A DNA stretch of 64,000 nucleotides from Octopus sinensis (Eukaryota): the NCBI RefSeq assembly GCF_006345805.1, contig NW_021832374.1, forward strand, positions 62,001 through 126,000, given 5' to 3'. Positions 3,159-60,511 of this stretch are shown here, piece after piece. A program made the translations under genes and the position numbers. The notes beneath the pieces are model-generated. The model was not told the DNA's origin. It made no database searches and saw nothing but the letters and a program-made list of their open reading frames with translations. The first letter of the stretch is position 1, and each line of letters starts with the position of its first letter.

Positions 3159-3598
3159 TTAAGATAAACGAGGAAACTCTTCCAGACTCGATAAGTTGAT
3201 ACTTCCTGTATTTTTCTGAACTCTATTATTGATAAGTTTTCCATCGGGTCCATATTGAATAAAAGGAACAAATTTCTTTTCTTTTTCTTCCTGTTTTGGA
3301 GCAAATTTGATAGGAGCTTTATTCCAAACATTTCCAGAAGGAACAGGAATTTCCACAGGCTGGGGAACTGGCTTTTCACATTCCAAAATCTCGTCAGTGC
3401 TTAAATATTGTTAATTAAATTATACTCTTTTGCTACTGGAATTGGCGTTTCTTCCTCAAAATCATCTTCTTCCACCTGTAAATACAAATTAGAGGGGGAG
3501 ATGTGATTTACCTTGTTTTGCTTCTCAGAATTCGCCATTTTTAAAGCATATTTCTGCTTTTCTTCATCAATTTTTTTGAATAACCGCTGCAAACTCAT
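3159..3598 (-). CDS. CDV3: CDV3-like small protein, 3 exons
   Basis: Introns 3476-3511 (36 nt) and 3400-3425 (26 nt) join the two track ORFs. The product has three motifs in CDV3 order: MSLQRLFKKIDEEKQK (cf. SLDNFFAKRDKKKK), SGNVWNK (cf. SGPWNK) and INLSSLEEFPRL (cf. EIYSDTQFPSL). Confidence 0.6.
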
Positions 3599-3734
3599 CG
3601 TCGTTGATTAACAAATAGAGCACAAGAAATATCAACAAATCGATAATGATATATATTTTATTTATTAATCCAATTATACATAAAAATAAAAATATAAAAT
3701 AAATAAAATAATAATCTCAAATATAAACTTGATC

Positions 3735-4450
3735 AACACCGCCTGGCCTGTCTGCTTTCGGGGTCCCAAAAGTATTCAGGAGCCTGACTGACAGCTATCC
3801 CAATGGCGTCAGTCGAGACATTACTGGATAACGAATGCCTTTACATAGCAGTTTCTCTGGACTTGGGATTAAAAATCTGCTGTGAGAATGAATTCCGATC
3901 GACATTCTAGGATTACACTTGCTGTCGTAGTGCTGGCCGATTTTGTGGGCTTAATTATGTGGCAAGCTGCGTCATTACATCTGCTGGATTCCCTAATGTG
4001 CTAGAACTAGTCGTGTTGGATCGCAAAGATGGAAAGCGCCCAAATTGCCTGAAAATATTACCCATTGATCACGGGAAATGCCTCATCTGAGACGCGACAT
4101 GCTCGGACATATTTTTAGCACATAAACTAATCTCGACAGTTGCTGAGTCCGATTCGGCGGCAAAAAACGCGGAACTCGTCAAAAAATACGCGTCCTTGGC
4201 TAGAAACCACACATTTGCACCAATAGCCGTTGGGACATTCTGACTCATCGGCCCAAATCGCTTTCTTTTCTACGTCGACGTGGAACAAAGATTGTAAAAA
4301 ATAAGGAACCCAACGAGACTCGTCATCTTTCCTTGTTAAAAAAAAATCAAAATCAAAATTTATTCCAAAGACCACCGTTAACCAAAAGAAAAAACTAACT
4401 AGGTGATCCCGACGAATTTGATCATTGCTCTCAGCTTCGCTCTGTGCTGC
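3735..4450 (+). mobile_element. Decayed CRE-clade non-LTR retrotransposon 3' part (restriction-like endonuclease)
   Basis: Interrupted translation WLTAIPM..LGLKIC..CRSAGR..LDRKDGKRP..DATCSD..FAPIAVGT aligns with the better-preserved copy at 59615-60230. Confidence 0.8.
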
Positions 4451-4459
4451 TCTCTTGAG

Positions 4460-5040
4460 CCCACACAAGATCGTTGAGGGCGGATCGTTTCTTTATACCA
4501 TTGATGCCCTTTTGTATTCTTCTCAATGAGAGTTTCGAAAGAGATTGGTGGTTTGATAGCTTCACCTGTATACCACCTTTCGGTAAGTGTGAAAGCTCTT
4601 TTCTGGGTTGCGGAGATTTTACGGATGTTTGTATTTGAAATCAGTGGCCCCCATGAGGCACAAACATATGAGATACATGGTTCCATATACTGTGAGTAGT
4701 GTTTTAACTATAGAGTGATTTCCCATTTTCCATAAACCAGTTAGGCATTTCAGGAGGTTGATTTTCTTTTCACACTTGTTCAGCACATTTGTGACATGTT
4801 TAGAGAAGTTCATGTGCGTGTCATAAGTTAATCCCAATATCTTTTGCCATTTGCTGAAAGGTAATACTCTTCCCTCCACAACAACTTCGATTGAAATTTT
4901 CGATAGTCTTTTGACTGAGGAGTAGAGAGTTGTGACAGATTTTTCTGTGTTGATCGACATCCGGTTTACGTTAAACCACTCAACTAGGTGATCCAGGTTT
5001 TGTTGTAATCTTCCTTTTGCTGTTGGAACTGGATTTTATG
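4460..5040 (-). mobile_element. Jockey/I-like LINE RT C-terminal fragment
   Basis: ORFs 4619-4960 and 4399-4686 (KILGLTYDTHMNFSKHV..KKINLLKCL; PCISYVCASW) resemble 56142-56675. Confidence 0.8.
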
Positions 5041-5245
5041 CGCCGGCAATTTAAAATAATCTTTTTCTGTGTTTTCTTTTTTTTGAAAAAATCTATACTC
5101 ATTATTTAAATATTTACCTTGAATTAAAAAAATTCTTACTAATCGCCAAAAAATTCATAATGGATCTCAGTCCCTTCTACAACTAAAGTTTAGATTATTT
5201 AAGTGAAATTTAAAGGTTAATCAAAAATCAAATTTAAGGTTTAAA

Positions 5246-6421
5246 TTAAAGAACTTCAAAGTTGGCAGAATAATCATAATTTTCAATTAAAGAACCCTTG
5301 GAACTGCATTTTGCTGCATATAAAGCAGCTCCGATAGCTGCAGTCTTTTTTAGATAAAGTAATCTATAGTCGACAGTTGGTTCCATTCCAGATTTGAATC
5401 CAGATTTCAACAAATCCCAACTTTTCCACATGGATCCTGTACAGACAATATCTACTGATGATTCGATCCCTGCCTTTCTTATCACTGCCATTATATGAAG
5501 AGCTAGATCTCTTCCAGCTTTATAAAAAATCGACTGTACTAATTCATCTCCATCTCTACCCAAATCTATCCAAAATAATAACAATACAAAATCAACCGCA
5601 AAGTGGTTTAGCGAGGGAAGCAATATTTGCAACCTTGAAATTCGAATAAAACAATTCCAAAAGATTGGTTATATTCTCCAACTATTTTAAATTTAAACTT
5701 CAATCAACTTAAAATGACTCATTATCATTTTTTCGGCACGTTCTATACTGAATGTTGACTTTTTTAAACCTTCAATGTCGTTTAATACGGTTTTAATAGT
5801 TTTTAATGATACAAAATATCCTAGAAAATATAAATTCATTCTACCCGATCCCTGATCTCCAAGAATGTAGCCCCAACCTCCACAAGTAATTTGGTGTCCA
5901 GTTTCAGTTAATAATGTGCAGTTTGATCCAGTCCCTGAAATAAGAGATATTCCACCTTTATTTTTAGAATAAAAAATATTAAACCACTAGGAGTAGCCGT
6001 ATATATTGATCCCACCGTATCATTAACAACTGTAAAGCTTTTAGCGACATTTGAATAATTCTGATAACAAATTTTTAAAATTTTTTCTTGACATGCTGAA
6101 GTATTCACACCAGCTAAAGCAAGTCCCTGATATAATGATAAATATATTATTAAATAAACCACAACAAGCACGTTTACTTCATTCTTAATACGCTTGAGTG
6201 CTTCATCAATTAGAGACATGATTCTTCTAACACATTCCTCAAATCCAATATGCTAGAATAAAACTAAATAATATTAAAACCCAGTGATTAGAAGATTCTC
6301 CGACAGATTCTGATAAAATGTTGCCCTTTAAATCAGAAATAATTGCAGTCGTGCCTGTTGCTCCACTAATAGAACAATAATTATATTACAGTAACCCTTC
6401 TACGCCTGCCAAAACATCCAT
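5246..6421 (-). CDS. NAGK: N-acetyl-D-glucosamine kinase, multi-exon
   Basis: Spliced MDVLAGVEGGATGT..SNHW..GLALAG..VVNDTVGSIYTATPSGGISLISGTGSNC..CGGWGYILGDQGSG..VCTGSMWKSW..AAIGAA are BadF/NAGK motifs; introns are about 24-33 nt. Confidence 0.93.
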
Positions 6422-12507: not shown

Positions 12508-14021
12508 TTAGTTTTCACTTGAATCAAGTCTATAAATTTTGTACTGGTCTCCGTATTCGGTTGTCGCGATTTCGAAAATGCACCCAAAACATAAAAGAAC
12601 TTCCCCGGAATTCATATCTTTGATTATCTATATCGATTCAATAAAAATATAATTGTTTATCACATTAAGAAGTGAAAAGTATTCAAGAAATAAATTCTTT
12701 TCCATTAAATTATATTTTTGAAGCTGAAACATAAACTTGGATAAATATTCGTGGAACTCTCATTTTGTATGGAATAATTAAATTGAGAATAGCAATATTC
12801 TTGAACAGGGATCTTATATTTTGTGCATAAAATAAGATTACTGATATCAAAGAAGCCATTTCGTTTCCAAGAGAATAAATTTTTGTGATAATCTCTATGT
12901 TCATATTGTCCGATCCAGTGAGCCTAAAAATATAATATAGAAAATATTTCTCACATCATGTTCCATAAAAATTTTGAATAAATCTCATCTAATTGTACAT
13001 TCAAGTTAATCTAGCTTTGTTTATTTTATTTTCAGTCATATACCCAAAATTTTACTAAATAAAATGCATATTTAGGGCCTTGTTGAAACATCCTTCCATA
13101 TTGTGGAGAAAATTTGTCGCTAATTTTATTTAGATTAATTTTCTAATAAATATATTTTAAAAAAATCGATAAACTTCATAAATGAAATCACAGGTAGATT
13201 CTATCCGTGAGAAAATATGTTTTTGCTTCGATATAAGCTTAAGTTAATTAGATTAAATATCTATACACATAACTGAAGCTTTTTAGTTTCTGAAAATATG
13301 TAATAATTATGTAATCTCAGTCTCACCCCGATAAAACCTCTGAAATCTAAATTATGCTGCATAATGTTGTTTATTGAAAGATTATATTGAAGAGGTGTTT
13401 GGTTGGAAAAAGAATTTCTAAAAGTTTTAAAATTTACTGAAACTTAGACTGTTGATTTGATGATATAATCTTAAAATATTTTAATCCAAACATTTACATT
13501 ATTAGAAGAAAAATTAAAAAATTTTGAGCATGACATTTTTGATTTGTCTGGAATAAAGTAATTCGTACTAAATGGAAATGATGCTTTGAACGAAAAATCA
13601 AAAGAGTAACTATTTGTTTGTTTGTTTTTAATAAATTGCTTAATTTTAGAGAATATTTTAAATATACATCTCTTTTTTTCATTCGACGATTTAATACCTG
13701 GATGTGACTTGATACTTGTTTCCGAGTACGAGTCTTGCCAGTTTTTTTATGTATATAACGAGCAATAAGTTCGTTCCTACCTAATGATATGTTAGATATA
13801 AAATAAAAAGGCCAACCAAACATTTTCTCGTCACTAGCAACAACTATCTTTTTTCTCCCACACGGGGGATATATATTTAAGGCATCTTGAAAAATTTTGT
13901 CAACTTCGGACGACCACACTCCTTCAGAAATTGAATCGTCGTCAGAATTGATTCTTAGCTCAGCGTTGTTGACGATTTGATTTTTTTTGTTGTACCTTCC
14001 AAAATCGTTCCAGTTTTCCAT
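12508..14021 (-). CDS. TEAD: TEAD/scalloped transcription factor (internal exon boundaries partly uncertain)
   Basis: TEA domain [53 protein letters not shown]-binding-domain pieces: [32 protein letters not shown], and the C-terminus [26 protein letters not shown]. Confidence 0.93.
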
Positions 14022-17929: not shown

Positions 17930-18540
17930 TTCATCAGGAGATCTTTTATAGGGATGATCAGGGCACTCTTATCAGAAACCTATCTATCGGTCAGGGTACG
18001 AGACAAGTGCTCTAAACCATTTGAAACAACATCTGGAACACCTCAAGGGGATTCGCTATCTCCTATACTGTTTGTCATATATCTGGAAGCTGCATTGAGA
18101 GAACTAAAACCATACTATGAAAGAAAGATCAATGTGGTGGCATACGCGGATGACGTGGATTTTATTTCTTCAGACAAGGACGCTCTGGAAAGCCTATTGG
18201 AGGTGATGCCAAATAGACTTGCTGAGTGGTTCCTCAATGTAAATGTGGAGAAAACAGAATTTACTGAACTAGCAAGACAGAAGTCTAAGCTGGACGAACA
18301 TTGGAGAAAAGTATAGAAACTCGGATCTCTATTGGGAGACGAACAAGACGTGATTATGCGGAAAACACATGCAAACAGTGCACTACGCAGCTTGAAGGAA
18401 AATTGGCTAAAACACAAAGGACTCAGCACAAAAACACGGATACGACTATACAGTTCACTAGTGAAGCCTATACTTCTATATAACGCCGGAACTTGGGGAC
18501 TTTCCGCTACAGACAATGACTTTGCCAAGTGAGGGCATTG
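17930..18540 (+). mobile_element. RTE-like LINE RT fragment
   Basis: GTPQGDSLSPILF..AYADDVDF (RT motifs 4-5), followed by LVKPILLYNAGTW. Confidence 0.9.
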
Positions 18541-26936: not shown

Positions 26937-29574
26937 ATGAGTAAACTACTACTTCTAGTTTATACTCAATTGGATGACAGCTTTAAAAATAAAGAAAAAT
27001 TTGTTGATGAAATTTCTTCATGTGTACTGAAAATTGGTGTTCGATATCTGTATAACAGCCTGAGAAAACGCAATTCGTTTCAATGGGCCTACAAATTTCC
27101 AAATGAATTACTCAATAACTGGCATAACTTTACAAGTATTGGATATTTTCAATTTCGTCAAACTTTGCTTAATAAAACTATTCAATTTGAAAATCCACTT
27201 ATTCATATACTTCGTAAAACATTTAAAGACCTCATATCAAGTTCAACTCTGTGGGAGTCTCCTACTCTATTATCCCCAATGGGGAAATCCACAAGAACCC
27301 CTGCAAAACATTCAAAACTTCCATCTGACTATACGAAACACGTAATTATAGTTGCCCGTATTCCTAATAACGAACAAGAAATTGGTGAATTTTCTAGCTT
27401 GTCTTTGTCAGAGCTAGAAACTATGGGAAGATCATTTGGGAATCTTATTCTGCCAGAAAATATTTGCAAAACTTTAAAACATAAGAAAATTTCAATTTTT
27501 TGGTTAAATATTGGCAATGGGGGTCGCTTTGTCAGTTTAATTGACAGTCTTCTCCGAAAAGTTAATGGAAGAGTTCTTGAAATATCTGACTTGATTAATT
27601 ATCCTTCTGATCTTTATGGATTTTCTAGTTTATTTTATGAAAACTTTTACCAACCGACTGTTCTAAGTGAAATATCAACGATTTTGAACGTCAAATTGCT
27701 CGGTGAAGCTTCAAGTTTTGAATTAGAAATACATTTTCTTGCAAAAAGTGTCGAATCTCATCCACAATTGGATGAAATGTTTTTGCTGGCTCAAATGGAT
27801 TATAAATTGCCTTCTCATCATTTTATTGAATTTTTTTCTCCACATTTTATATTTGCTCGTGTACCTGGAAATCAGTCGTCTTTGATTTTGGGAAATTTGG
27901 TAGATTCTTAAATTTTTAAATTGTAGTTTTTGTTTTCAAAAGGAAAATTCTGGATTTTATGTTGGCACGACTTTTCTCGTTCTTGTGGTTTTTTATATCC
28001 AGTAAAAGATATCGAAATAATCAAAACATGTTCCAATTTTTGTAAGTTTGTTTTGTAAAATGCTTTAAGGTGAGTCAGATACTGCCATAGATTTCAAACA
28101 AGATTATCTCGATCCGATCTACCAGCCACCAGTGGACGCATCATTTCATAAAGATTTTGAGAATTTTGATTTTTTTGAAGACTTTGTTGTGGACTGCGAA
28201 GATCCAAACGAAGACCTGGAAATACTTTCTAGTTGTGTATCTCAAAATGCTTCCCCTATTTTGGAATGTATTTATTTGATAAATTTATTTTTTAGTGTCT
28301 GAATTGGATGGAGAATGGTTTTCTAAGTTTGCACATGATTTGTATAAAAATCGGCACAAATTTTCATTTCAGGAGTTTATTTCTCGCCTTTATAACTCTG
28401 CTAAAGTATATTGGATTAACACGGAAAAAAATGTTTATTTAAGTTGTATTATGTTTATACAGTGGGAAGAAAATCTTGGTCAGTTTATTTACGATTTTTT
28501 TCTTTTGAGCTTTCCCGATCTTTTAACTAAGTTTTCAAACGATGAAATTGATGCAGATGAGTTTTATATTTTCTAGTAATTTTAGACTTTTATTTCAACT
28601 TTTGCTGTATTTTGAAGTAAAAACACTCCAGAATGACGAAATTGTCAATTTTTCAGTTTTTCAAGTTTGTTTTACGATTTAAAAAAGATTGAATCGTTGC
28701 TAAAGCAGGTTACTTTTAAAGCCGGACCTCCGAAAGTCGCCAAGTATATAAAGACTTTATATTACATGTGTAAATCTTAAATCAAGAAACTGAGTTTTAG
28801 GTATTATGATGTACTCCCCACTTTTGTTGAAGAAATTTACGATTTTTTGATGGTGGAATTGCCAGAAAACGAAAGGGAGGAAACTTGTGATGTTTTTGAA
28901 GATCCGAATTCTGACGATACTAAATCCCTGGTTTCATTAGAAGTCCCAAAAGACCTTTCCATCAACGAAATGTGTCAAAATTATATTTACATATTTTAAA
29001 GTCCTCTCCATCAGAGACCTCGGTTTTCAAGTCAAATTGGCTATCGATTGGATAAGGCGCCAAAAATTACTGTTCCATACTCAAGTGAAGATTCTTTTCA
29101 GACAAATTTGGGCTAATTTGTTTAATTTAGTATTAGATGCGGAAAAGGGGAAAATTCGACAAAAGAGGAGGGAAAGAAGACTATATTTGGGATCATACGA
29201 GAGTTGAATTTTTATTAAATAATTGTTAGAAACGCGTCAAAATCGAGAAAGAATAATGAAAATTGTTCAGGAAACTCCAGAAAAATATCACGGAATTTCT
29301 GTTTTTCACAGATCTAAAATCAGGGATTCGGTCGAATTTGTCTGTGAAACTCCGCCAAAATCTGGCACGCTTTATTTGGCTTAATATTTAAGGAGTATCT
29401 CAAAATGAGTTTAAATCAGTTCTTCCAGATTATAACACTTTTAATACTTCTTTTTATGGATCTGAAGTTGTATCAAGAATTGTTAAGAAGTCAGAGGAAT
29501 CTAAAACATCTGCTGAGCAAATTAGTCCGAGAAAAGCCAATAGGATTATATTTGAAGAATTTTTTGACGATTAA
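26937..29574 (+). CDS. TICRR: Compact Treslin/TICRR (Sld3 orthologue), about 750-800 aa
   Basis: N-terminal blocks FQWAYKF (cf. HWAFKF), LWESPTLLSP (QWDRPEITSP), IVARIPNNEQEIGEF (LLAPCPHSQRELLQF), LILPENI..KISIFWL (LLPKRV..KITFYWV). Sld3-like core LLFQLLLYFEV..YYDVLPTFVEEIYDFL. Paired CDK sites IVQETPEK and FVCETPPK. Confidence 0.8.
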
Positions 29575-29697
29575 TTTTGTTTATTTTTGAAAACTATTTT
29601 TTAATAAAATAATTAGATATGTTAATTTTTTAACTGATTTGACAAATTCAGTGATTTTTAACTACAAAATGACAAATTTTATGATATGCGAATATAT

Positions 29698-31446
29698 GAG
29701 TAAAACCTCTCGAATCCGCCGATTTTGGGACCGACCAAAAATCAATTAAATAATATTTTATAGTTGAAACATGAACTTACAATATAGATTAAGTATTTCT
29801 TTTTATATACAAATGGCTGAATACATAAAATTATTTATATTCAAAAAATCAGAAATTTTATTTTTTTAATTAATTTTCTTAAAATTTCCCCAATTCGCAT
29901 AATATTTTCATGATCATCTATATCTGCATTTACCTGAGAAGCATAAGTTTTAATAATCTCTAGAGCTCTGAAAGCTTCTGAGAGATCAACTCTTTTCTCA
30001 TTTGATTCCTCTTCAATAATTGTTTCCTAAATATAATTATTAAATAAAATCACTAACTGATTGAATTCATTTTCAGTATATCCATAATCAACAAATTCAC
30101 TATAAGATATTGGATCGTCAATTTGAAATTTCTTAATTATTTCTTCATAATTATTTTCGTAGTTCTTAGATTCACTGTTGATTGTGATTGTTTCACATTT
30201 TATCCACTGTGCATGACGGAAACAATTTTTGATGGTTGTAGGAGTAACTTTATTCCAAGCGAAAAATGTTAATGTCGCAGCAGTTTTAAGGGTGATTGCA
30301 TTAATTGCATTCTGACAATTTTCCCCTGCCTCAACCTTTTCGATTATATCATTTATTTTCAAATTGGTAAATTCGGCTTTAAAGCATTTTATAATTCCTT
30401 GATCCATTGGTTGCAAGAGCGAGGAAGTTCTAGGAGGCAAAAAAAGAATTTCAATTGAATTTAACGTGACAATAATTTGATGAGATGGACATTGATCTAT
30501 TGCAAGTAGAATTTTTCTTTTTTTCTTCGCAAGTTCACAATCAAAATCACTGAGCCACTTGTTAAAAATTTCACGGTTCATCAATGCCTTATTGGAATGG
30601 ATGTAGGTAACATATTTTCCAATGTTGAAATTTTTAAAACACCTTGGACTTTTGAATCTTCCTATCATTACAGGTCTTCTTTTATCGGAACCAGAACAAT
30701 TTGCGCATAATTAGTAAAGAAAATCGATCCTTCGACAACTTTATTCCAGGCCTTGGTTTAGTGCACACACTTTTAGAAAGAATCGCCTTGTAAAAAACAT
30801 CAGTTTTATCTGAATTATAGACATTATCCAATCCATATTGTTCAATTATTAAACTGATTGTTTCATTAAAATCAGCAATATATTTTTCATCATGATTTAC
30901 TGATCCACTGTCTCCATGAAATTTTTTCAACTTGATACCATTTCGTAATTTACACTTTTCTAGCCACCCACGACTTGCTTTAAATTCTGGATCATTTTTA
31001 AGAGCTTTTGTAATTAACATAGAATCTGATAGAATTGCTCCACTAGATTCCATTAAGTTAATCCATGTTATCATCGCTACATCAATTTCATTAAATTTGA
31101 GTTTTGGAATTCTCGTTATGTTTAATTTTTTGATGTCAGTCCTATTCAAAAGGTCCGATTTTGATTTAAGGTCGTTTATAGTTCTCGGAGAAATTTTCTT
31201 TTTTAATCGTGAAGAAAAAATTCTGGAAATTTGAGGTGCAGAAACGAATGGATTGTCAAAAATATAATGTAGTATAGAAATTTTTTCGTTGATAGAAAGT
31301 CTAACACAACGACGCATCACAAAAATACAATTTAACGTGTAATTAAAATTTTAAACAAGAGGATTCAAGAATCATTCATAGGAAATTTCAAATTTTTGAT
31401 TAAAACAAGCGGATTCGAGCAGCGGCGGATTCAAGAGGTTTCACTG
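29698..31446 (-). mobile_element. pogo/Tigger DNA transposon, nearly full length, frameshifted transposase
   Basis: TIRs gagtaaaacctctcgaatccgccg / cagtgaaacctcttgaatccgccg, with TA at the right end. CENP-B HTH (ASRGWLEKCKLRNGI) and DDE_1 (LAIDQCPSH, FLPPRTSSLLQPMDQGII). Confidence 0.92.
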
Positions 31447-31569: not shown

Positions 31570-32610
31570 TTATTATTTTAGCATATTCCGTGGGGACATA
31601 AACCGAAAAGAGTTATATTCCTACACGTGCCACACACGACACGACCTTCTGTACCAACGATTTTCAGCTTCCGCGGTTTTGGGCCAGTATCCGAAGTTCG
31701 TCACAGGTCTTCAGGGTTTTCTTTAAAAGCTTCAAGTCGTCTTGCAGAACAACCCCGATCTTGTAAATAGTCGAGTTGCTGATTTTCTTCGACCAGTGTA
31801 GGCAGTTCAGGGAACGAAGCTGGTTTCTGTGGAGAGTCGAGGTTCTTTAGATCTGAATCAGAAATGCCTCATGTTGAGGAGTTGTAGAATAGTACAGGTT
31901 TGACGAAAGCGTTGTAGACTCTAGCGCGTAGTGATGGGCCCATCTGGCAGTGTCGTAACCAATTCTTCATGACAGTTTTTAGAGCAACAGCAACCAGTAT
32001 TTTTCTACGAATTATGTCCTCCCGGTCATCAAGCAGTGAGCTAAGCTTCTTGGATAGTCTCCATGTTTCCATAAGTTGAGTGTCTGAGCGTGATATCTCA
32101 ATCACTTCCGTCTTGTTCGGGTTCATTTTTAGAAACCATTCCCCGAGTTTTCCTGGTGCAATCTCCAGCAGTCTAGCCAGTAAGAAGTCGACATCATGCG
32201 CGTAGATAATTTCAATAATTGACTCCCCATATAGGCTTCTCAGCTCTCGTAGGGCAGCTTCGAAGTAAATCCCGAAGAGCAGTGGTGAAAGGAAGTCACC
32301 CTGAGGAATTCCCACATTTGTTAAGAAGGGTCTGGACAAAGTCCTCCCAAGGCGGACAGTAAGTTCCGTGTTTGTCAGTAGTACCTGGATAATTCTGGTT
32401 TCATCCTCTTCTAAGAAGTTCCGCAGGATCTTCATTAGCAGATCTTGGTGAATGCTGTGAAAGCTCTCGACATATTGATCCCCAGGATGATTGCGGTACT
32501 TTTGAATCTTTGGTAGGCTGCACACCGCCATCAGTAGCCCCACATAACGTCTGCGGTAGATCTTTCTTCTCTGGGCGGAGGTTTTCTACTGGGCCAATAG
32601 GTTTGTTAGA
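31570..32610 (-). mobile_element. RTE-like LINE, 5'-truncated, with (TAA)n-like tail
   Basis: ORF 31869-32543 contains GIPQGDFLSPLLF..IYAHDVDF..FVKPVLFYNSST. Confidence 0.9.
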
Positions 32611-54058: not shown

Positions 54059-55636
54059 ATGTCCATAGTTAAAGTAATGTTACATTTTGAAAATGAATCC
54101 ACCCCTTATGTCTATGAAATAAACAGTCAAAGATGGAAAATATATTCCGAACTTGATCATATGCTTGTTCCAGTCCATTTACTTAAAAACGAATTAGAAA
54201 TATCTAATAATTATCGTTTTTTTGTAACATCCCAAGATGATGAAATCGGGTAATCTTTAATAATTATTTTAGTTCTGTTCGACGTGAAATTAAGGACACA
54301 GATTCTATTAAAATCAATCCAAATGGAAGAATTGATTTATGGGTTTTTATTTTCTCATATATATTAACAGTTGATTAAAATTAGTGACAAGAATTCACCC
54401 GCAAGTTCCGCCTGTGTTGTTTCTAACAGGTTACTTCATATTGTAGCATATGCCTTTAAGCGATTATAAATATATTGATTAATATATTAATTTAGATATC
54501 AGGAATCTGTTGATATTGGTGGAGAACCAGCCCGATCGACTCAATCTTGGTATTTAAATAGTCATTAATTTATTCTTGTAGTATTTCTTCTATAGCTACA
54601 GGTTTTTCCTGGTCAAATCTAAATCGGAAATTAAAAAGAAAAGTAATTATTTTTTAATAATCGAAAGCAATTTCCCTGCAGTAGTATTTGTCAATCCTCA
54701 AGCATAATGAGCGGACTTTCATTTTCTGATGTTAAAATTGTGCATGTGGACTTGAGATTGTCTCCTTATGTCCCATTCGGGATTACTTTTTCCGGTCGGA
54801 TCAACTCAATCGGGCACGATCAGGGAATATTTATTGACTCAGTTCTTCCTGGGTTTATAATTCTGGTCATATTTAGTGGAGCGGCTGATATTTATGGCAG
54901 ATTTCGTGTAGGAATGCTCATTCTTGAGGTCAACGGAACTTCTTTAGAGAATATTTCAAATTTCCAGGCTTTAAAACTTTTAGAAGACTCTCTTAAGCCT
55001 GAAAAGTATTTTATTTATTTTAAGCAAAGATATGGCCTTTCTCTTGTTTTGGCGGAGTTTTCGTCTCCAAATTTAATAAATTCGTTGCAAAAGGATCCGA
55101 ATTTAAAGTCGGCTCATTGCAGTGATTCGGGGACTTTGGTCTCTGCCAGTAGTTGTATTGAAAGTTAAGAAATTTTAGGGAGAATAACTCAGAATGATAG
55201 TTTGAGCATAAATTCAGATATGTTTATTATTGTGGCGAATATGCTCAGAAGTGATATTCCTCACTCGTTGCCTATTCGTGACAGAGTTTGGCTTAAAATG
55301 CCAATTTCTAACGCTTTTCTGGGCTCGGATTTGATTGTCTGGCTTTTGCAGAATGTTGCTGGGATCAGACGTAGAAAGGAAGCTTTGGCATATGCAATGA
55401 CAATGTTGGACACTGGGTTTATCAGGAGCGCTATTTTGTCAGATAAAAAACAGGATTTTTCACAGCAGCGTTATTATATGATTGCCCCACCAATTGTCGA
55501 ACGTTGATTTTTGTTTTTAATTTATTTAGGGCTGCGTTTGTCTTCGGGTGCTGTTTCTTTGTTTAGTGAGAGTTTGGTAAGTAATATAAAGCCAAAAACC
55601 TCCCGTCGTGTTAGTGAACCAACTTTTTCTTTATGA
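54059..55636 (+). CDS. DVL: Dishevelled (DIX-PDZ-DEP), short C-terminus
   Basis: DIX STPYV..YRFFVTSQDDEIGSVRREI..NGRIDLW; PDZ PFGITFSG..GIFIDSVLPGGAA..MLILEVNGTSLENISN; DEP LPIRDRVWLKMPISNAFLGSDLIVWL..RKEA. Confidence 0.93.
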
Positions 55637-56049: not shown

Positions 56050-58090
56050 CAGAAAAAAACTAAATTTTAAGGCACCGAACGAAATATATAGAGTTCTTAT
56101 AAGAACAGCTCCATTAATACAAGCACTTAGATTCAACTGCCTCAGATAACTTTTTTACTATTAGGTGTTCTTTTCGTTCTATATAATTTATTTATGCTTT
56201 CCCATACTGTACATCCGTAAACAATTGTCGGTTTAATGTATTGGGTGTATAGAGACTCTAATCGGTAATTTCCTTTGGCGTCTTCCAAGTTTCCAAGAAA
56301 TGCTTTAAGAAAGTTTAGTTTCTTATTGAATTTCGTCAACACGTTTTCCGTATGGGGAGTAAAGGTTAGAAAGGTGTCAAAGGTGATCCCTAGTATCTTT
56401 AGAGTTTTATTTTGAGGAATTGATTTCCCTTCCATGATCACATTTATCGACAAATTCCCCAGTCTTTTGTTAGTTGTGAAAATTGCTAGCTCAGACTTTT
56501 CCGGGCTTACTTTCAACAGATTGGCATTGAGCCATATACACAGGTTATTTATATTTTTCTGTAATCTTCCCGTAGCTTCGCTGACACATATGTCTTTCGA
56601 TGCAACGATTATATCATCCGCATATGATAGTAAAATGTCATTCTTGTTTTCAGGAAGAGGCATATTGTTCAACATTAGGTTGAATAATATGGGGGATAGG
56701 GGGAACCTTGTGGCACTCCATTCGGTAGTAGCCTCGATGCAGATCTTCGATTGCCCTTGTAGACTCTACCCCGACGTCCATTCAGAAAATTGGCGAGCCA
56801 TAGTTTTAAATTTGGTTCCATATTAAAAGAGTAAATTTTCTGCGTAAGAATTTTTCGGGAGACCGTGTCAAAAGCCTCGTAAATATCAATTTAGCATACA
56901 ATCGTTTTTTCTTGTTTTAGTTTCCTTCTCAACCCTTTTTAATAAATTTTAAGATTGGATGGATTTTTGATTGTTTCCATATATTTGGAATACTGTTTTC
57001 ATTTACTGACTGGTTGTAGATGGCCGTTAATGCCGTGATAGCTACAGGGCCCAGTTTCTTGAGCAGAATCATTGGTATTCCGTCTGGACCACAGGAAATT
57101 GTATTCTTTGTGTGTTGGATTATCAATGTGACTTAATCATGTAGAAAAGGGGTTGATAGATGTCCCTTTTTTGGTTTTCGTACAAAATTTGGTGGCCTAT
57201 TGTGTTTCTGATATGGTTTGTAGTTGTGCTTCATAAATCTTGCTCCGGATCGCCATATTCAGTGTCCTTATTCTCTTTGTTGTTTCTTTGGTTAAAATTT
57301 TTTTGCGTTTGAGGAAGTTTCTTTCCTTTATCAGTTTGATAATTTCTGGGTTTTGTTTTCTTTCTGATATTTTCCGGTATACTGCCCTATCGAAAGAGTT
57401 GGGTTCCGGATAAAATGTGGAAAGTTTCGTATCGACGTATTTCTTATAAGCTGACCATTTTTCATTATTGTAATCGTAGTAGGAATCATGTTTCTTTCGG
57501 GTCATTGGAGAACAATTTATCTGTATAATGATTGGATTGTGATCAGTCTGTAGATCATAGTTTACCGTCCAAAAAATAAATGGTGCTAATTTCGGGGAAC
57601 ACAAGGTTAAGTCTGGGGATGTGGTCGATTCTTTTCCGTTATATGGCGTCCTTGTATTTTTCTTTGGATCGTTCATAATGGACAGCCTCTTGAATTGGAA
57701 AATAATGAGGTTTTCTCTCGCATCCGCCGGTTGTTTTTGAAACCACAGAAGGTGTTTGGCATTAAAATCTCCGGAAAGCAGTAAGTTGTCCACAGTAAGA
57801 CAGATCGACAGTAAATCCTTTGGCGCGTGACCCCGGTGGGGGAATATATAAGTTTCCAATACTAATAATTCCGTTGGAGGTATAAATACTAAGTCCCATG
57901 ACTTCAGAGTTAGCATCTTGGGCCAGTTTTGTAAAGATTTCATGAGTTTTGTGAATGCAATTCCCTTCCTGATAAGGGTCATTAAGCCCTCACCCGACCC
58001 GTGGGTAACTTCGTTTCTTGTAGCAGGCAAATATCGATATTCTTTCTTTCCACGAGTTTGTCCCCCTTGCTTTTGAGACCACTGGCGTAG
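56050..58090 (-). mobile_element. Jockey/I-like LINE with APE endonuclease and RT, frameshifted
   Basis: LLLSGDFNAKH..SPDLT..TDHNPI (APE); SCGPDGIP; LLSYADDI..LKILGITFD (RT). Confidence 0.9.
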
Positions 58091-59038: not shown

Positions 59039-60511
59039 CTGTCAAACCTCTCCAATTTATCATCTCTATAATTTACCACTCTCCTTTTTTATTAAAAAAA
59101 TGAAATTCTGTTTTCCCTTATATTTTTTATTTTTTGCCATTTTATTAAAATTTTTTTATTAAGGGTTATTAAAATTTTAAATTAATCACGTGTTTTTGTC
59201 TCGTGTTTTGGGGAATCATTGTGTTTTTTAAGTTTATCAAAATACAGGCTATTTCTATTAGAAAAACTATGCTTGGAGTGACATTTACTCTAAGACTATC
59301 GACAATTGCTGGAATAAAACAAGCCTCACGAATTGAATAATTGATGATTTTTTGTATGAAATCGGGAAATTCGGAGAATTACTAAATGAACTAAACATTA
59401 TTGATGTACCCGATTAGGAGAAAATCCTAGAGATCGACTTAAGAATAAAAGATCGGATTATTGACGACAGGATTTTTAACAATGACAAAAAACTTGGAGG
59501 AATGTGAAATGGAAATAGAAGGTACTGAAAATTTAAAAATTGGATTGGATGATGCTGTGAATAATTTCAACAATTTCAAAACACTTTTTGTTTTGCCCGA
59601 ACATTTTTTTAATGATTGAACTCCGTGTCGGGCTGAAAATCTGCCAGTCGCACAAATGCCGTTGTGGGGGAACTGTTGACGAGTACGGTTTGCATCCCCT
59701 CGCTTGCCGGCGGAGTGCCGGTCGTGCCCCCCGTCACAGTGAACTCAACTCAGTCGTACAGAGAGCCCTCGCCTCAGCAGGCATCCCGTCTATCCTTGAA
59801 CCTGTTGGATTGGATAGAGGGGATGGCAAACGCCCTGACGGCATGTCCACCTTCCCCTACGAGCAGGGGAAATCCCTTATTTGGGATTCTACCTGCTCGG
59901 ACACGTTCTCGCTGGGAAATCTCGCTCTGTCCGCCGCCAATCCTGGGCACGCTTCCAGGCAGGCCGAGGAGCGAAAGATTCTCAAGTACGGCCACCTGTC
60001 CAACTCGCTGCTCTTTACTCTAATTGCCTTGCAGTCCTCCGGGATCTTCGGTCCCAAGACACTCCGCTTCCTTCGCTCGCTCGGTCGACGGATTTCAAGG
60101 ACTAGTCACGATCCAGAGAGTTTTCTTGGCTCCTGGAACGTCTGTCGATCGCTGTGATCCGAGGGAACGTCTTCGCCATTCGCGCGGCTGGTCGGGTGTC
60201 TCGTGAGGCCTTTAACTAACTTAGCTATCTGTAATTTTTGTCTTGTTTGTATAGATTGTTATTGTATTGAAAACTATCGAAAACATACTTAACAAGGAAC
60301 GGAGAAAAAAAATATTATTAGATTATCTAACTGTTCCTAAAAAAATTTTATCTTCTTTATTTTGACTAATAAACCAGCTGGAAACAAAAAATAGAAAAAT
60401 AATTAAAATCATGATAAAATGACATTCAAGCTTTAAATCTTTTTTTACCACCTTATTTTTTGCCACTATTTTTGTCGGTCCCGTCGTTGGCAATAAATAG
60501 AGGGTTGACTG
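59039..60511 (+). mobile_element. pogo/Tigger-derived non-autonomous element containing a CRE insertion
   Basis: TA-flanked ends ctgtcaaacctctc / cagtcaaccctcta. An acidic transposase C-terminal remnant (EECEMEIEG..GLDDAVNNFNNFKTLF) stops at the CRE and resumes after it (IENILNKER..LLDYL). Confidence 0.6.
59615..60230 (+). mobile_element. 5'-truncated CRE-clade non-LTR retrotransposon, well preserved and GC-rich
   Basis: CCHC knuckle CRCG..HPLAC, RHSELN, endonuclease core DGKRPDG..WDSTCSDT..EERKILKY, C-terminus LSIAVIRGN; one frameshift near 60125. Confidence 0.9.

What the first reader, a model, noticed from the sequence alone, without database searches (positions are those of the whole stretch)
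29084..29392. Two candidate GC-AG micro-introns bracket the Treslin CDK-site region
Seen: the frame hits TAA at 29114 unless a 25-nt GC-AG intron (29112-29136) is spliced; the alternative is a 53-nt GT-AG intron from 29084. After the second TP site, an in-frame stop is avoided only by a 28-nt GC-AG intron (29365-29392), which opens a further 60-codon exon. Every other intron I resolved is GT-AG. Inference: weak donors could control, by intron retention, whether Treslin carries its TopBP1-binding sites. That would be a splicing switch on origin firing, relevant to lineages with endoreplicating somatic cells.
Basis: partly seen in the sequence, partly recalled or inferred. Interest (0 to 1): 0.7.

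Follow-up and report, generated by a model that had tools for sequence, protein, structure and literature searches.

The report
Candidate GC-AG micro-introns, orphan gene end
At the end of a fast-evolving gene in an animal genome with 25-30-base introns, one claimed 28-base GC-AG intron is probably real and the other is a coin flip, while the gene's identity as Treslin and the proposed splicing switch on DNA replication have no support.

Summary
The GT alternative starts at 29085 (52 nt), not 29084. The gene (ATG 26937, stop 29573-75) has eight other GT-AG introns of 23-33 nt, in a roughly 31% GC animal genome whose introns have a median of about 28 nt, as in myxobolids and dicyemids.

Site 2 is probably a real GC-AG intron. 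The 60-codon exon 29393-29575 scores as strongly coding (+19 to +27 bits), has no ATG, and so must be spliced on. The GC donor beats the overlooked GT-AG alternative (29344-29395, 52 nt, which deletes the second TP site) by 3.6-7.6 bits. It beats termination at SGTLYLA* by 9-12 bits.

Site 1 is unresolved. Using the second GT of a GTGT donor (28974 instead of 28972) puts the exon in frame 0, which reads through 29112-36 with no intron. That model ties with the GC-AG model in likelihood.

"Treslin" is unverified. Pfam, two very large protein searches, PDB sequences and a metagenome scan found nothing, and the AlphaFold2 model was unusable. Retaining intron 2 would not remove the TP sites. The splicing switch is speculation that needs RNA data. 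Interest is low.

The parts
26937..29575 (+). It has no detectable homologues and its Treslin identity is unverified.
   Evidence: The ORF and exon chain were built by hand and recovered by my own gene finder at 198 bits. No Pfam, homologue or PDB match was found.
28972..29001 (+). GT-AG intron with a tandem GTGT donor. Donor 28974 (28 nt) leads to frame 0, the read-through model B.
   Evidence: Sequence and translations. The two models tie in likelihood, 0.0 against +0.2 bits.
29002..29111 (+). Exon whose frame is in dispute. Frame 2 gives PLHQRPRFSSQIGYRLDKAPKITVPYSSEDSFQTNL. Frame 0 gives LSIRDLGFQVKLAIDWIRRQKLLFHTQVKILFRQIW.
   Evidence: Codon log-odds are +9.3 for frame 2, the median of true frames. 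Frame 0 scores -5.8, and only 0.3% of true frames score that low. The absolute-codon likelihood ratio is only 2-3 when calibrated.
29112..29136 (+). Candidate GC-AG micro-intron 1: 25 nt, phase 1, GCTAAT...TATTAG, with an in-frame TAA at 29114-16.
   Evidence: Sequence. It is 80% A+T with 4% C, which is intron-like; only 9% of exon 27-mers are that AT-rich. My judgement is a posterior of about 0.4, weighing the likelihood tie and the calibrations.
29085..29136 (+). Alternative GT-AG intron at site 1: 52 nt, GTGAAG..., which removes SEDSFQTNL.
   Evidence: Sequence. It scores 1.3-5.4 bits below the GC-AG model. The 27 nt it would remove score as coding, +3.5 bits against the intron model.
29137..29202 (+). 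66-nt basic mini-exon encoding (D)AEKGKIRQKRRERRLYLGSYE.
   Evidence: The frame is open. Its codon score is uninformative at -1.6. It is 59% A+T, which is exon-like. The 145-nt intron that would skip it scores 6-10 bits worse.
29203..29229 (+). Ordinary GT-AG intron: 27 nt, phase 1, 85% A+T.
29230..29364 (+). 135-nt exon carrying two full CDK-consensus sites, TPEK (29274-29285) and TPPK (29349-29360), 25 residues apart.
   Evidence: Codon log-odds +10.3. Motif positions. Skipping this exon scores 19-23 bits worse.
29365..29392 (+). Candidate GC-AG micro-intron 2: 28 nt, phase 1, GCACGC...TTTAAG. If it is retained, the frame ends at TAA 29382-84 (...SGTLYLA*). A 31-nt variant ends at AG 29394-95.
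   Evidence: Sequence. It was chosen by the gene finder even with a 7-bit penalty on GC. It is the best of all the site-2 models.
29344..29395 (+). Alternative GT-AG intron at site 2: 52 nt, GTGAAA..., which deletes CETPPKSG, the second TP site.
   Evidence: Enumerated from the sequence. It scores 3.6-7.6 bits below the GC-AG model. Its first 21 nt are 52% A+T with 29% C and score +4.3 bits as coding.
29393..29575 (+). Terminal coding exon of 60 codons plus TAA (VSQNEF...EEFFDD*). It has no ATG and contains a third CDK-consensus site, SPRK (29524-29535).
   Evidence: Codon log-odds are +27.3 and +18.8 with two models. The five other frames score between -0.6 and -102. Ending the protein at 29384 scores 9-12 bits worse.
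29603..29608 (+). The only AATAAA between 29380 and 29700, 28 nt after the stop at 29575. It is a possible poly(A) signal.
   Evidence: This is weak evidence, because stop-to-AATAAA distances in the other predicted genes range from 18 to 424 nt.

Best explanation
This is the 3' end of an ordinary, constitutively spliced but very fast-evolving gene. It lies in an animal genome whose introns are almost all 20-35 nt and whose 5' splice signal is little more than GT. Myxobolid myxozoans and dicyemids are the two lineages known to be like this.

The last 60-codon exon (29393-29575) is real. It is most likely attached by a 28-nt U2-type GC-AG intron (29365-29392). I put the probability of a GC donor there at about 0.8.

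The first claimed GC-AG intron (29112-29136) is unresolved, at about 0.4. The equally likely alternative uses the second GT of the tandem GTGT donor at 28972/28974. The exon is then read in frame 0 and the 25-nt segment is simply coding.

Shown here: the letters, the frames, the coding statistics and the absence of homologues. Inferred: which junctions are actually used. Nothing indicates a regulatory role. Two full CDK-consensus sites in the penultimate exon and one in the last exon suggest a CDK-regulated protein, but that is not evidence that it is Treslin.
For: - The window's predicted introns have a median of 28 nt and donors reduced to GT[A/T]. This matches the published figures: median 27 bp and a 'GTa' signal (PMC13644364; PMC6543705).
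- The terminal exon has codon log-odds of +27.3 and +18.8, no ATG, and five non-coding alternative frames.
- In the full likelihood comparison at site 2, GC28 scores 0, GC31 -2.4, GT52 -3.6 to -7.6, and a stop at 29384 -9.5 to -12.4 bits.
- The 21 nt between the GT and GC donors at site 2 are exon-like: +4.3 bits, 52% A+T.
- At site 1, GC25 scores 0, the read-through model B -0.8 to +2.2, and GT52 -1.3 to -5.4 bits.
The 25-mer is intron-like at 80% A+T.
- With GC allowed at a 7-bit penalty, only these two GC donors are picked among about 80 predicted introns.
Against: - No RNA evidence of any kind could be reached, and no orthologue exists in any collection searched, so every junction is inferred from statistics trained on 5-6 thousand codons and about 63 self-predicted introns from this window alone.
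- GC-AG introns make up less than 1% of animal introns (PMC7072748). Two within 280 nt of one gene would be unusual.
- Neither GC donor has the strong flanking consensus that usually compensates for a GC donor.
- Control dinucleotides rescue the same two places almost as well as GC, with gene scores of 163-165 against 167.
- Frame 0 is open for 49 codons upstream of 29137, which happens in only 1.9% of off-frames. That favours the read-through model at site 1.
Confidence: 0.6

Rival explanations
1. Both 29112-29136 and 29365-29392 are GC-AG micro-introns, spliced constitutively.
For: It is the top or joint-top likelihood model. Both introns fit the local length mode of 25-28 nt. The flanks are exon-like and the 25-mer is intron-like in composition. 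The codon score favours frame 2. Published work reports that short introns cluster in the same genes (PMC13644364).
Against: The read-through model B ties at site 1. The calibrated absolute-codon likelihood ratio is only 2-3. With a GC-AG prior below 1% (PMC7072748), two in ten introns has a probability of about 0.4%.
Confidence: 0.33
2. Both junctions are canonical 52-nt GT-AG introns (29085-29136 and 29344-29395, both starting GTGAA). The protein then lacks SEDSFQTNL and the second TP site.
For: Both are frame-compatible. Longer introns of 44-87 nt do exist in the window. No rare donor type is needed.
Against: The joint model scores 4.9-13 bits below the GC/GC model. The segments that would be removed score as coding, +3.5 and +4.3 bits. 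The second is 40% G+C with 19% C, unlike local introns. 52 nt lies in the thin tail of the length distribution.
Confidence: 0.05
3. The protein ends at SGTLYLA* (TAA 29382-84), and 29393-29575 is 3' UTR that happens to be open.
For: No non-canonical intron is needed.
Against: The downstream frame scores +19 to +27 bits, above the mean for true coding windows of 12.5 with sd 6.4. This model scores 9-12 bits worse overall. The only AATAAA lies 28 nt after the 29575 stop.
Confidence: 0.02
4. The GC donors or the frame break are assembly artefacts: a T miscalled as C at 29113 or 29366, or a 1-nt indel between 28990 and 29113 that shifts frame 2 into frame 0.
For: At site 1 a single indel would remove the need for any intron, because frame 0 is open throughout.
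Against: At site 2 no single indel can work. Frame 0 stops at 29382 and frame 1 is closed until 29391. Two independent T-to-C miscalls at exactly these bases are unlikely, which is an inference.
Confidence: 0.05
5. One reading: the gene is Treslin/TICRR, and regulated retention or alternative use of the weak GC donors switches its TopBP1-binding CDK sites on or off.
For: - TPEK and TPPK lie 25 residues apart near the C-terminus. The known Sld3 sites (600 and 622) and Treslin sites (T969 and S1001) have similar spacing (PMC8807876).
- Exons 29137-29202 and 29230-29364 are bounded by phase-1 introns and are multiples of 3 nt.
- The GT(29344) against GC(29365) choice would toggle the second TP site.
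Against: - No homology to Treslin by any method.
- Retaining intron 2 keeps both TP sites.
- All donors in this genome are 'weak'.
- Skipping the TP exon scores 19-23 bits worse.
- There are no expression data.
Confidence: 0.03

Closest known systems
U2-type GC-AG introns, the major non-canonical class (under 1% of animal introns; PMC7072748)
   Same: GC at the 5' end and AG at the 3' end. Excision restores a continuous coding frame. The rest of the segment looks like the local GT-AG introns in length, A+T richness and acceptor.
   Different: At 25 and 28 nt they would be among the shortest GC-AG introns in an animal. They lack the strong flanking donor consensus (AG|GCAAGT, recalled from my own knowledge) that usually accompanies a GC donor; here the donors read G|GCTAAT and G|GCACGC. 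No RNA evidence is available.
Ultra-short introns of myxobolid myxozoans and dicyemids (PMC13644364; PMC6543705; PMC6736024)
   Same: The window has a median intron of about 28 nt, donors reduced to GT plus A or T, acceptors reduced to AG, about 31% G+C and LINE and DDE transposons. Henneguya salminicola is reported at 29.1% G+C with a median of 27 bp, and Dicyema sp. at a median of 27 bp.
   Different: The species of the window was not identified. The papers I read do not mention GC-AG introns in these lineages.
Treslin/TICRR-Sld3 origin-firing factors (PMC8807876)
   Same: A large N-terminal region is followed by two S/T-P CDK-consensus sites about 25 residues apart near the C-terminal end. 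At 787 aa the overall length is close to Sld3.
   Different: There is no detectable sequence similarity to the CIT/vWA, M or STD domains or to any Treslin or Sld3 protein. The structure prediction failed. The two TP sites alone are not diagnostic.

Membership tests
GC-AG (U2-type) intron | GC dinucleotide at intron positions +1/+2 and AG at the 3' end | tested here: met
   29112-13 GC and 29135-36 AG; 29365-66 GC and 29391-92 AG.
GC-AG (U2-type) intron | Removal joins two coding exons in frame, and retention gives a premature stop | tested here: inconclusive
   Site 2 is met on statistics: the downstream exon scores +19 to +27 bits, has no ATG, and GC is the best model. Site 1 ties with a model in which the segment is coding.
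GC-AG (U2-type) intron | Spliced junction observed in RNA | not testable with these tools
   No transcript-derived protein or contig for this gene exists in any searchable collection.
GC-AG (U2-type) intron | Strong remaining 5' splice-site consensus compensating for the GC (a typical feature, not an absolute one; recalled from my own knowledge) | tested here: not met
   The donors read G|GCTAAT and G|GCACGC. However, the local GT donors show no extended consensus either (PMC13644364).
GC-AG (U2-type) intron | Length and composition typical of the genome's introns | tested here: met
   25 and 28 nt against a local median of 28. A+T is 80% and 68% against an intron mean of 74% with sd 12.
Treslin/TICRR-Sld3 | Sld3-Treslin domain (STD) and M domain (Ku70-like beta-barrel) detectable by profile or structure | tested here: not met
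   No Pfam family of any kind at E<=1 on the whole protein. With the protein split into segments at E<=10, only two sub-threshold unrelated matches appeared, HEAT_SCC3-SA and Mis12. No PDB sequence match. This could reflect extreme divergence.
Treslin/TICRR-Sld3 | N-terminal CIT/vWA domain | tested here: inconclusive
   No Pfam hit. No homologue among 1.84 billion representatives. The AlphaFold2 model of exon 1 had pLDDT 31.7, so no fold comparison was possible.
Treslin/TICRR-Sld3 | TDIN: two CDK sites that bind TopBP1/Dpb11 BRCT repeats when phosphorylated | tested here: inconclusive
   TPEK and TPPK lie 25 residues apart, which is compatible in pattern. The full protein has four [ST]Px[KR] sites. 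Binding cannot be tested here.
Ultra-short-intron animal genome (myxobolid or dicyemid type) | Median intron below 30 nt with reduced splice-site motifs, in an animal | tested here: met
   73 predicted introns with a median of 28 nt and GT[A/T] donors. A TEA-domain gene with animal homologues is present. The species was not identified.

The most novel reading that the evidence does not exclude
The gene is an extremely diverged Sld3/Treslin orthologue. Competing 5' splice sites would then produce isoforms with or without the second CDK site or the whole C-terminal CDK cluster: the GC donor at 29365 against the GT donor at 29344, and the GTGT tandem at 28972/28974 together with the GC donor at 29112. 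In a lineage with ultra-short introns, this would couple splice-site choice to origin-firing competence.
Probability: 0.03. Interest if true: 0.55.

Novelty: new member of a known kind. Interest (0 to 1): 0.2.

Why it matters
If RNA data confirm it, a 28-nt (and perhaps a 25-nt) GC-AG intron would show that the stripped-down spliceosomal signals of ultra-short-intron animals still tolerate the commonest non-canonical donor. It would also flag a trap for annotation. A gene predictor that allows only GT-AG would truncate this protein at SGTLYLA*, or would delete a CDK site by choosing a 52-nt intron. Beyond that the locus is ordinary. There is no evidence of regulation and no secure gene identity.

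Tried and rejected
- **Gene identity.** I searched Pfam on the whole protein and on four segments. I also ran the 5.8-billion-protein search and HMMER against 1.84 billion representatives with exon 1, and searched PDB sequences and metagenome loci. I looked up the exact product of exon 1. All were empty. The AlphaFold2 model of exon 1 had pLDDT 31.7, so I ran no fold search.
- **Species.** A TEAD query found only relatives at or below 70% identity and no same-species protein. Rfam and tRNA scans of the window found nothing.
- **Gene finder.** The first run, with introns up to 300 nt, chained unrelated genes together and was discarded. A flat length penalty produced spurious long introns.
- **Rejected junction models.**
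  - GT43 plus GT30 (28972-29014 and 29072-29101): -11 to -15 bits.
  - The 145-nt intron 29085-29229: -6 to -10 bits.
  - The 58-nt intron 29072-29129: -5 to -9 bits.
  - Skipping the TP exon: -19 to -23 bits.
  - An 18-nt GC...AG segment 29112-29129 leads into a frame that scores -9 downstream, so I dropped it by hand.
- **Antisense or transposon origin of the last exon.** The minus-strand frames score -12 to -46. The neighbouring transposon's inverted repeat begins only at 29699.
- **Literature.** The held papers on dicyemid and myxozoan genomes contain no mention of GC-AG introns.
Full report
**What is at the coordinates**

The window is A+T-rich, about 25-37% G+C in 2-kb bins.
- 29112-29136 is GCTAATTTGTTTAATTTAGTATTAG, 25 nt, with TAA at 29114-16.
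- 29365-29392 is GCACGCTTTATTTGGCTTAATATTTAAG, 28 nt. The frame-0 TAA is at 29382-84.
- The GT alternative at site 1 begins at 29085 and is 52 nt.

**The gene**

A gene starts at ATG 26937. Exon 1 is 321 codons long. Short GT-AG introns follow:

| Intron | Length (nt) |
|---|---|
| 27900-27926 | 27 |
| 28042-28069 | 28 |
| 28268-28295 | 28 |
| 28561-28585 | 25 |
| 28665-28687 | 23 |
| 28768-28800 | 33 |
| 28972-29001 | 30 |
| 29203-29229 | 27 |

A small gene finder that I wrote for this window recovers the same chain. It uses codon log-odds, a penalty on intron length and dynamic programming on both strands.

**What kind of genome this is**

- The window carries a TEA-domain gene with animal homologues.
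- It also carries PDZ and C2H2 exons, LINE fragments and a DDE transposon.
- The 73 introns predicted in its better genes have a median of 28 nt. Their donors show little beyond GT followed by A or T.
- This matches the two animal lineages known to have such introns. Myxobolid myxozoans include Henneguya salminicola, with 29.1% G+C, a median intron of 27 bp and a 5' signal reduced to 'GTa' (PMC13644364). Dicyemids have a median of 27 bp (PMC6543705), and Dicyema japonicum has 36.7% G+C (PMC6736024).
- I could not identify the species. No protein of the window is in the large collections.

**Gene identity**

'Treslin' is not supported by any test I could run.
- Pfam gives no family at E<=1 on the whole protein. 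At E<=10 on four segments it gives only two sub-threshold, unrelated matches, HEAT_SCC3-SA and Mis12.
- The word-indexed search of 5.8 billion proteins returned nothing.
- A full HMMER scan of 1.84 billion representatives with exon 1 returned nothing.
- PDB sequences gave only noise.
- Metagenome contigs held no relative.
- AlphaFold2 on exon 1 without an alignment gave pLDDT 31.7, so a fold search would have been meaningless.

Some features are compatible with an Sld3/Treslin-like protein. There is a large N-terminal region, and two full CDK-consensus sites, TPEK and TPPK, lie 25 residues apart near the C-terminus. A third site, SPRK, is in the last exon. The published definition is CIT/vWA, M beta-barrel, STD, and a TDIN with two CDK sites: T969 and S1001 in human Treslin, positions 600 and 622 in Sld3 (PMC8807876). 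A pattern of two TP sites is not diagnostic. The label stays a hypothesis.

**Site 2 (29365-29392)**

The exon downstream, 29393-29575, is coding.
- In the frame VSQNEF...EEFFDD* it scores +27.3 bits with the first codon model. It scores +18.8 bits with a model trained without this gene.
- True 60-codon windows average 12.5 bits with sd 6.4.
- The other five frames score between -0.6 and -102.
- The exon has no ATG, so it must be spliced onto an upstream exon.
- It lies outside the neighbouring transposon, whose inverted repeats are at 29699-29721 and 31423-31445.

Enumerating the phase-compatible donors gives three options.
- The GC at 29365, with acceptor AG at 29392 or 29395.
- A GT at 29344 paired with the AG at 29395.
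- No splicing, with the protein ending at SGTLYLA*.

I compared these in a full likelihood: absolute codon probabilities, a first-order intron model, an empirical length prior, an intron-entry probability and a prior on GC donors. The priors were varied from 0.3% to 2% for GC donors and from 12% to 25% for the long-intron tail. Animal genomes have under 1% GC-AG introns (PMC7072748).

| Site-2 model | Bits relative to GC28 |
|---|---|
| GC28 (29365-29392) | 0 |
| GC31 (29365-29395) | -2.4 |
| GT52 (29344-29395) | -3.6 to -7.6 |
| Stop at 29384 | -9.5 to -12.4 |
| Skipping the TP exon | -19 to -23 |

The 21 nt that GT52 would remove look like exon. They score +4.3 bits as coding against the intron model, and they are 52% A+T with 29% C. 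Nominally the GC donor has more than 90% of the posterior. Allowing for a crude model trained on one window, I put it at about 0.8.

**Site 1 (29112-29136)**

The upstream donor is a tandem GTGT.
- Using 28972 (30 nt) gives frame 2, which runs ...SSEDSFQTNLG and then stops at TAA.
- Using 28974 (28 nt) gives frame 0. That frame is open from about 28990 to 29205 and reads through the 25-nt segment with no intron. I call this model B.

- Frame 2 scores +9.3 bits over 29003-29110, the median of true frames. Frame 0 scores -5.8, and only 0.3% of true frames score that low.
- In leave-one-gene-out windows where an off-frame is also open, none of 209 showed a reversal as large. A normal approximation gives a likelihood ratio of about 37.
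- The 25-mer is 80% A+T with 4% C. Only 9% of exon 27-mers are that A+T-rich. Its flanks are exon-like at 67% and 59% A+T.

Evidence against it:
- Calibrated on absolute codon likelihoods, the ratio is only 2-3.
- Frame 0 being open for 49 codons happens in 1.9% of off-frames.

| Site-1 model | Bits relative to GC25 |
|---|---|
| GC25 (29112-29136) | 0 |
| Model B (no intron) | -0.8 to +2.2 |
| GT52 (29085-29136) | -1.3 to -5.4 |
| GT58 (29072-29129) | -5 to -9 |
| GT145 (29085-29229) | -6 to -10 |
| GT43 plus GT30 | -11 to -15 |

I put the first GC-AG intron at about 0.4.

**Control for chance**

I allowed the gene finder a second donor dinucleotide at a 7-bit penalty.
- With GC, exactly two such introns were chosen among about 80 in the window, at 29112 and 29365.
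- Ten of the 14 control dinucleotides (AT, CT, TT, AA, TG, CA, CG, AG and others) were chosen at one or both of the same two places. Only two uses fell elsewhere, AT at 54466 and TT at 3872.
- The gene's total score was slightly lower with controls, 163-165 against 167 with GC.

So these two spots really do lack a short canonical solution. The preference for GC rests on prior knowledge that GC-AG is the common non-canonical class. It does not come from anything specific in the coding scores. A phase-compatible NGC codon within the last 9 or 12 codons before the stop is expected in 15% and 19% of cases.

- Retaining intron 1, if it is an intron, stops translation one codon later, before both TP sites.
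- Retaining intron 2 adds only TLYLA* and keeps both TP sites. It loses the last 60 residues, which include SPRK.
- Only the GT(29344) alternative would remove a TP site.
- The last three introns are all phase 1. Exons 29137-29202 (66 nt) and 29230-29364 (135 nt) could therefore be skipped in frame. Skipping scores far worse than inclusion.
- 'Weak donor' does not single out these introns, because the donors in this genome lack an extended consensus (PMC13644364).
- No RNA data, orthologues or raw reads were reachable. Regulated retention, endoreplication and origin firing remain untested speculation.

**Verdict**

- The second GC-AG micro-intron is probably real.
- The first is a coin flip against a canonical read-through model.
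- The Treslin label and the splicing switch are unsupported.

This would be a new member of a known kind, U2-type GC-AG introns in an ultra-short-intron animal. Its main practical value is as an annotation caveat.

Noticed in passing
window 29699-31445 (transposase ORFs 30027-30668 and 30682-31320, minus strand): A pogo/Tc5-type DNA transposon lies about 120 nt downstream of the gene's stop codon. It has a DDE_1 endonuclease (E 8e-27) and an HTH_Tnp_Tc5 domain (E 2e-10). It is bounded by 23-nt inverted repeats, 91% complementary, at 29699-29721 and 31423-31445.
   Followed up: partly
window 13781-13816, minus strand, inside ORF 13494-14021: The TEA-domain (TEAD/scalloped-like) gene has a 36-nt GT-AG intron (GTTGGCC...CATTAG) that is a multiple of three and has no stop. 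Plain ORF reading therefore inserts [12 protein letters not shown] into the conserved ...[14 protein letters not shown]... motif. My gene finder missed it.
   Followed up: partly
window 3849-3978, minus strand, in the predicted gene 3159-6421 (BadF/BcrA-type ATPase exon at 5246-5632): This is the main other region where the gene finder reaches for non-GT donors of many kinds once the penalty is lowered to 4 bits. It also places a G+C-rich 46-nt 'intron' there. The cause may be a mis-modelled longer intron, a frameshift or a decayed exon.
   Followed up: no
window 4619-4960 (-), 17954-18316 (+), 31869-32543 (-), 56142-58030 (-): There are several fragments resembling non-LTR retrotransposons. 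Pfam confirms reverse transcriptase at 31869-32543 and 56142-56675 and endonuclease-reverse transcriptase at 57197-58030. The ORFs at 4619-4960 and 17954-18316 look RT-like by eye only. This fits the LINE-rich genomes described for these parasites.
   Followed up: partly
window 59588-60157, plus strand: A 189-aa ORF, noticeably richer in G+C than its surroundings, overlaps a second open frame at 59664-60023. It has no Pfam match. It is probably part of a mobile element.
   Followed up: no
window 29393-29590: Two plus-strand frames are open for more than 60 codons across the terminal exon. Only one, VSQNEF..., scores as coding. The other, EYLKMSLNQFF..., scores about 0 and is reachable only through a GT donor at 29340 that would delete the second TP site.
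   Followed up: yes
window 29085-29136 and 29344-29395: The two canonical alternatives at the disputed sites are both exactly 52 nt. Both begin GTGAA, and both contain a similar TTTGG(G)CT(T)AAT stretch. No explanation was found, and it may be coincidence in A+T-rich sequence.
   Followed up: no
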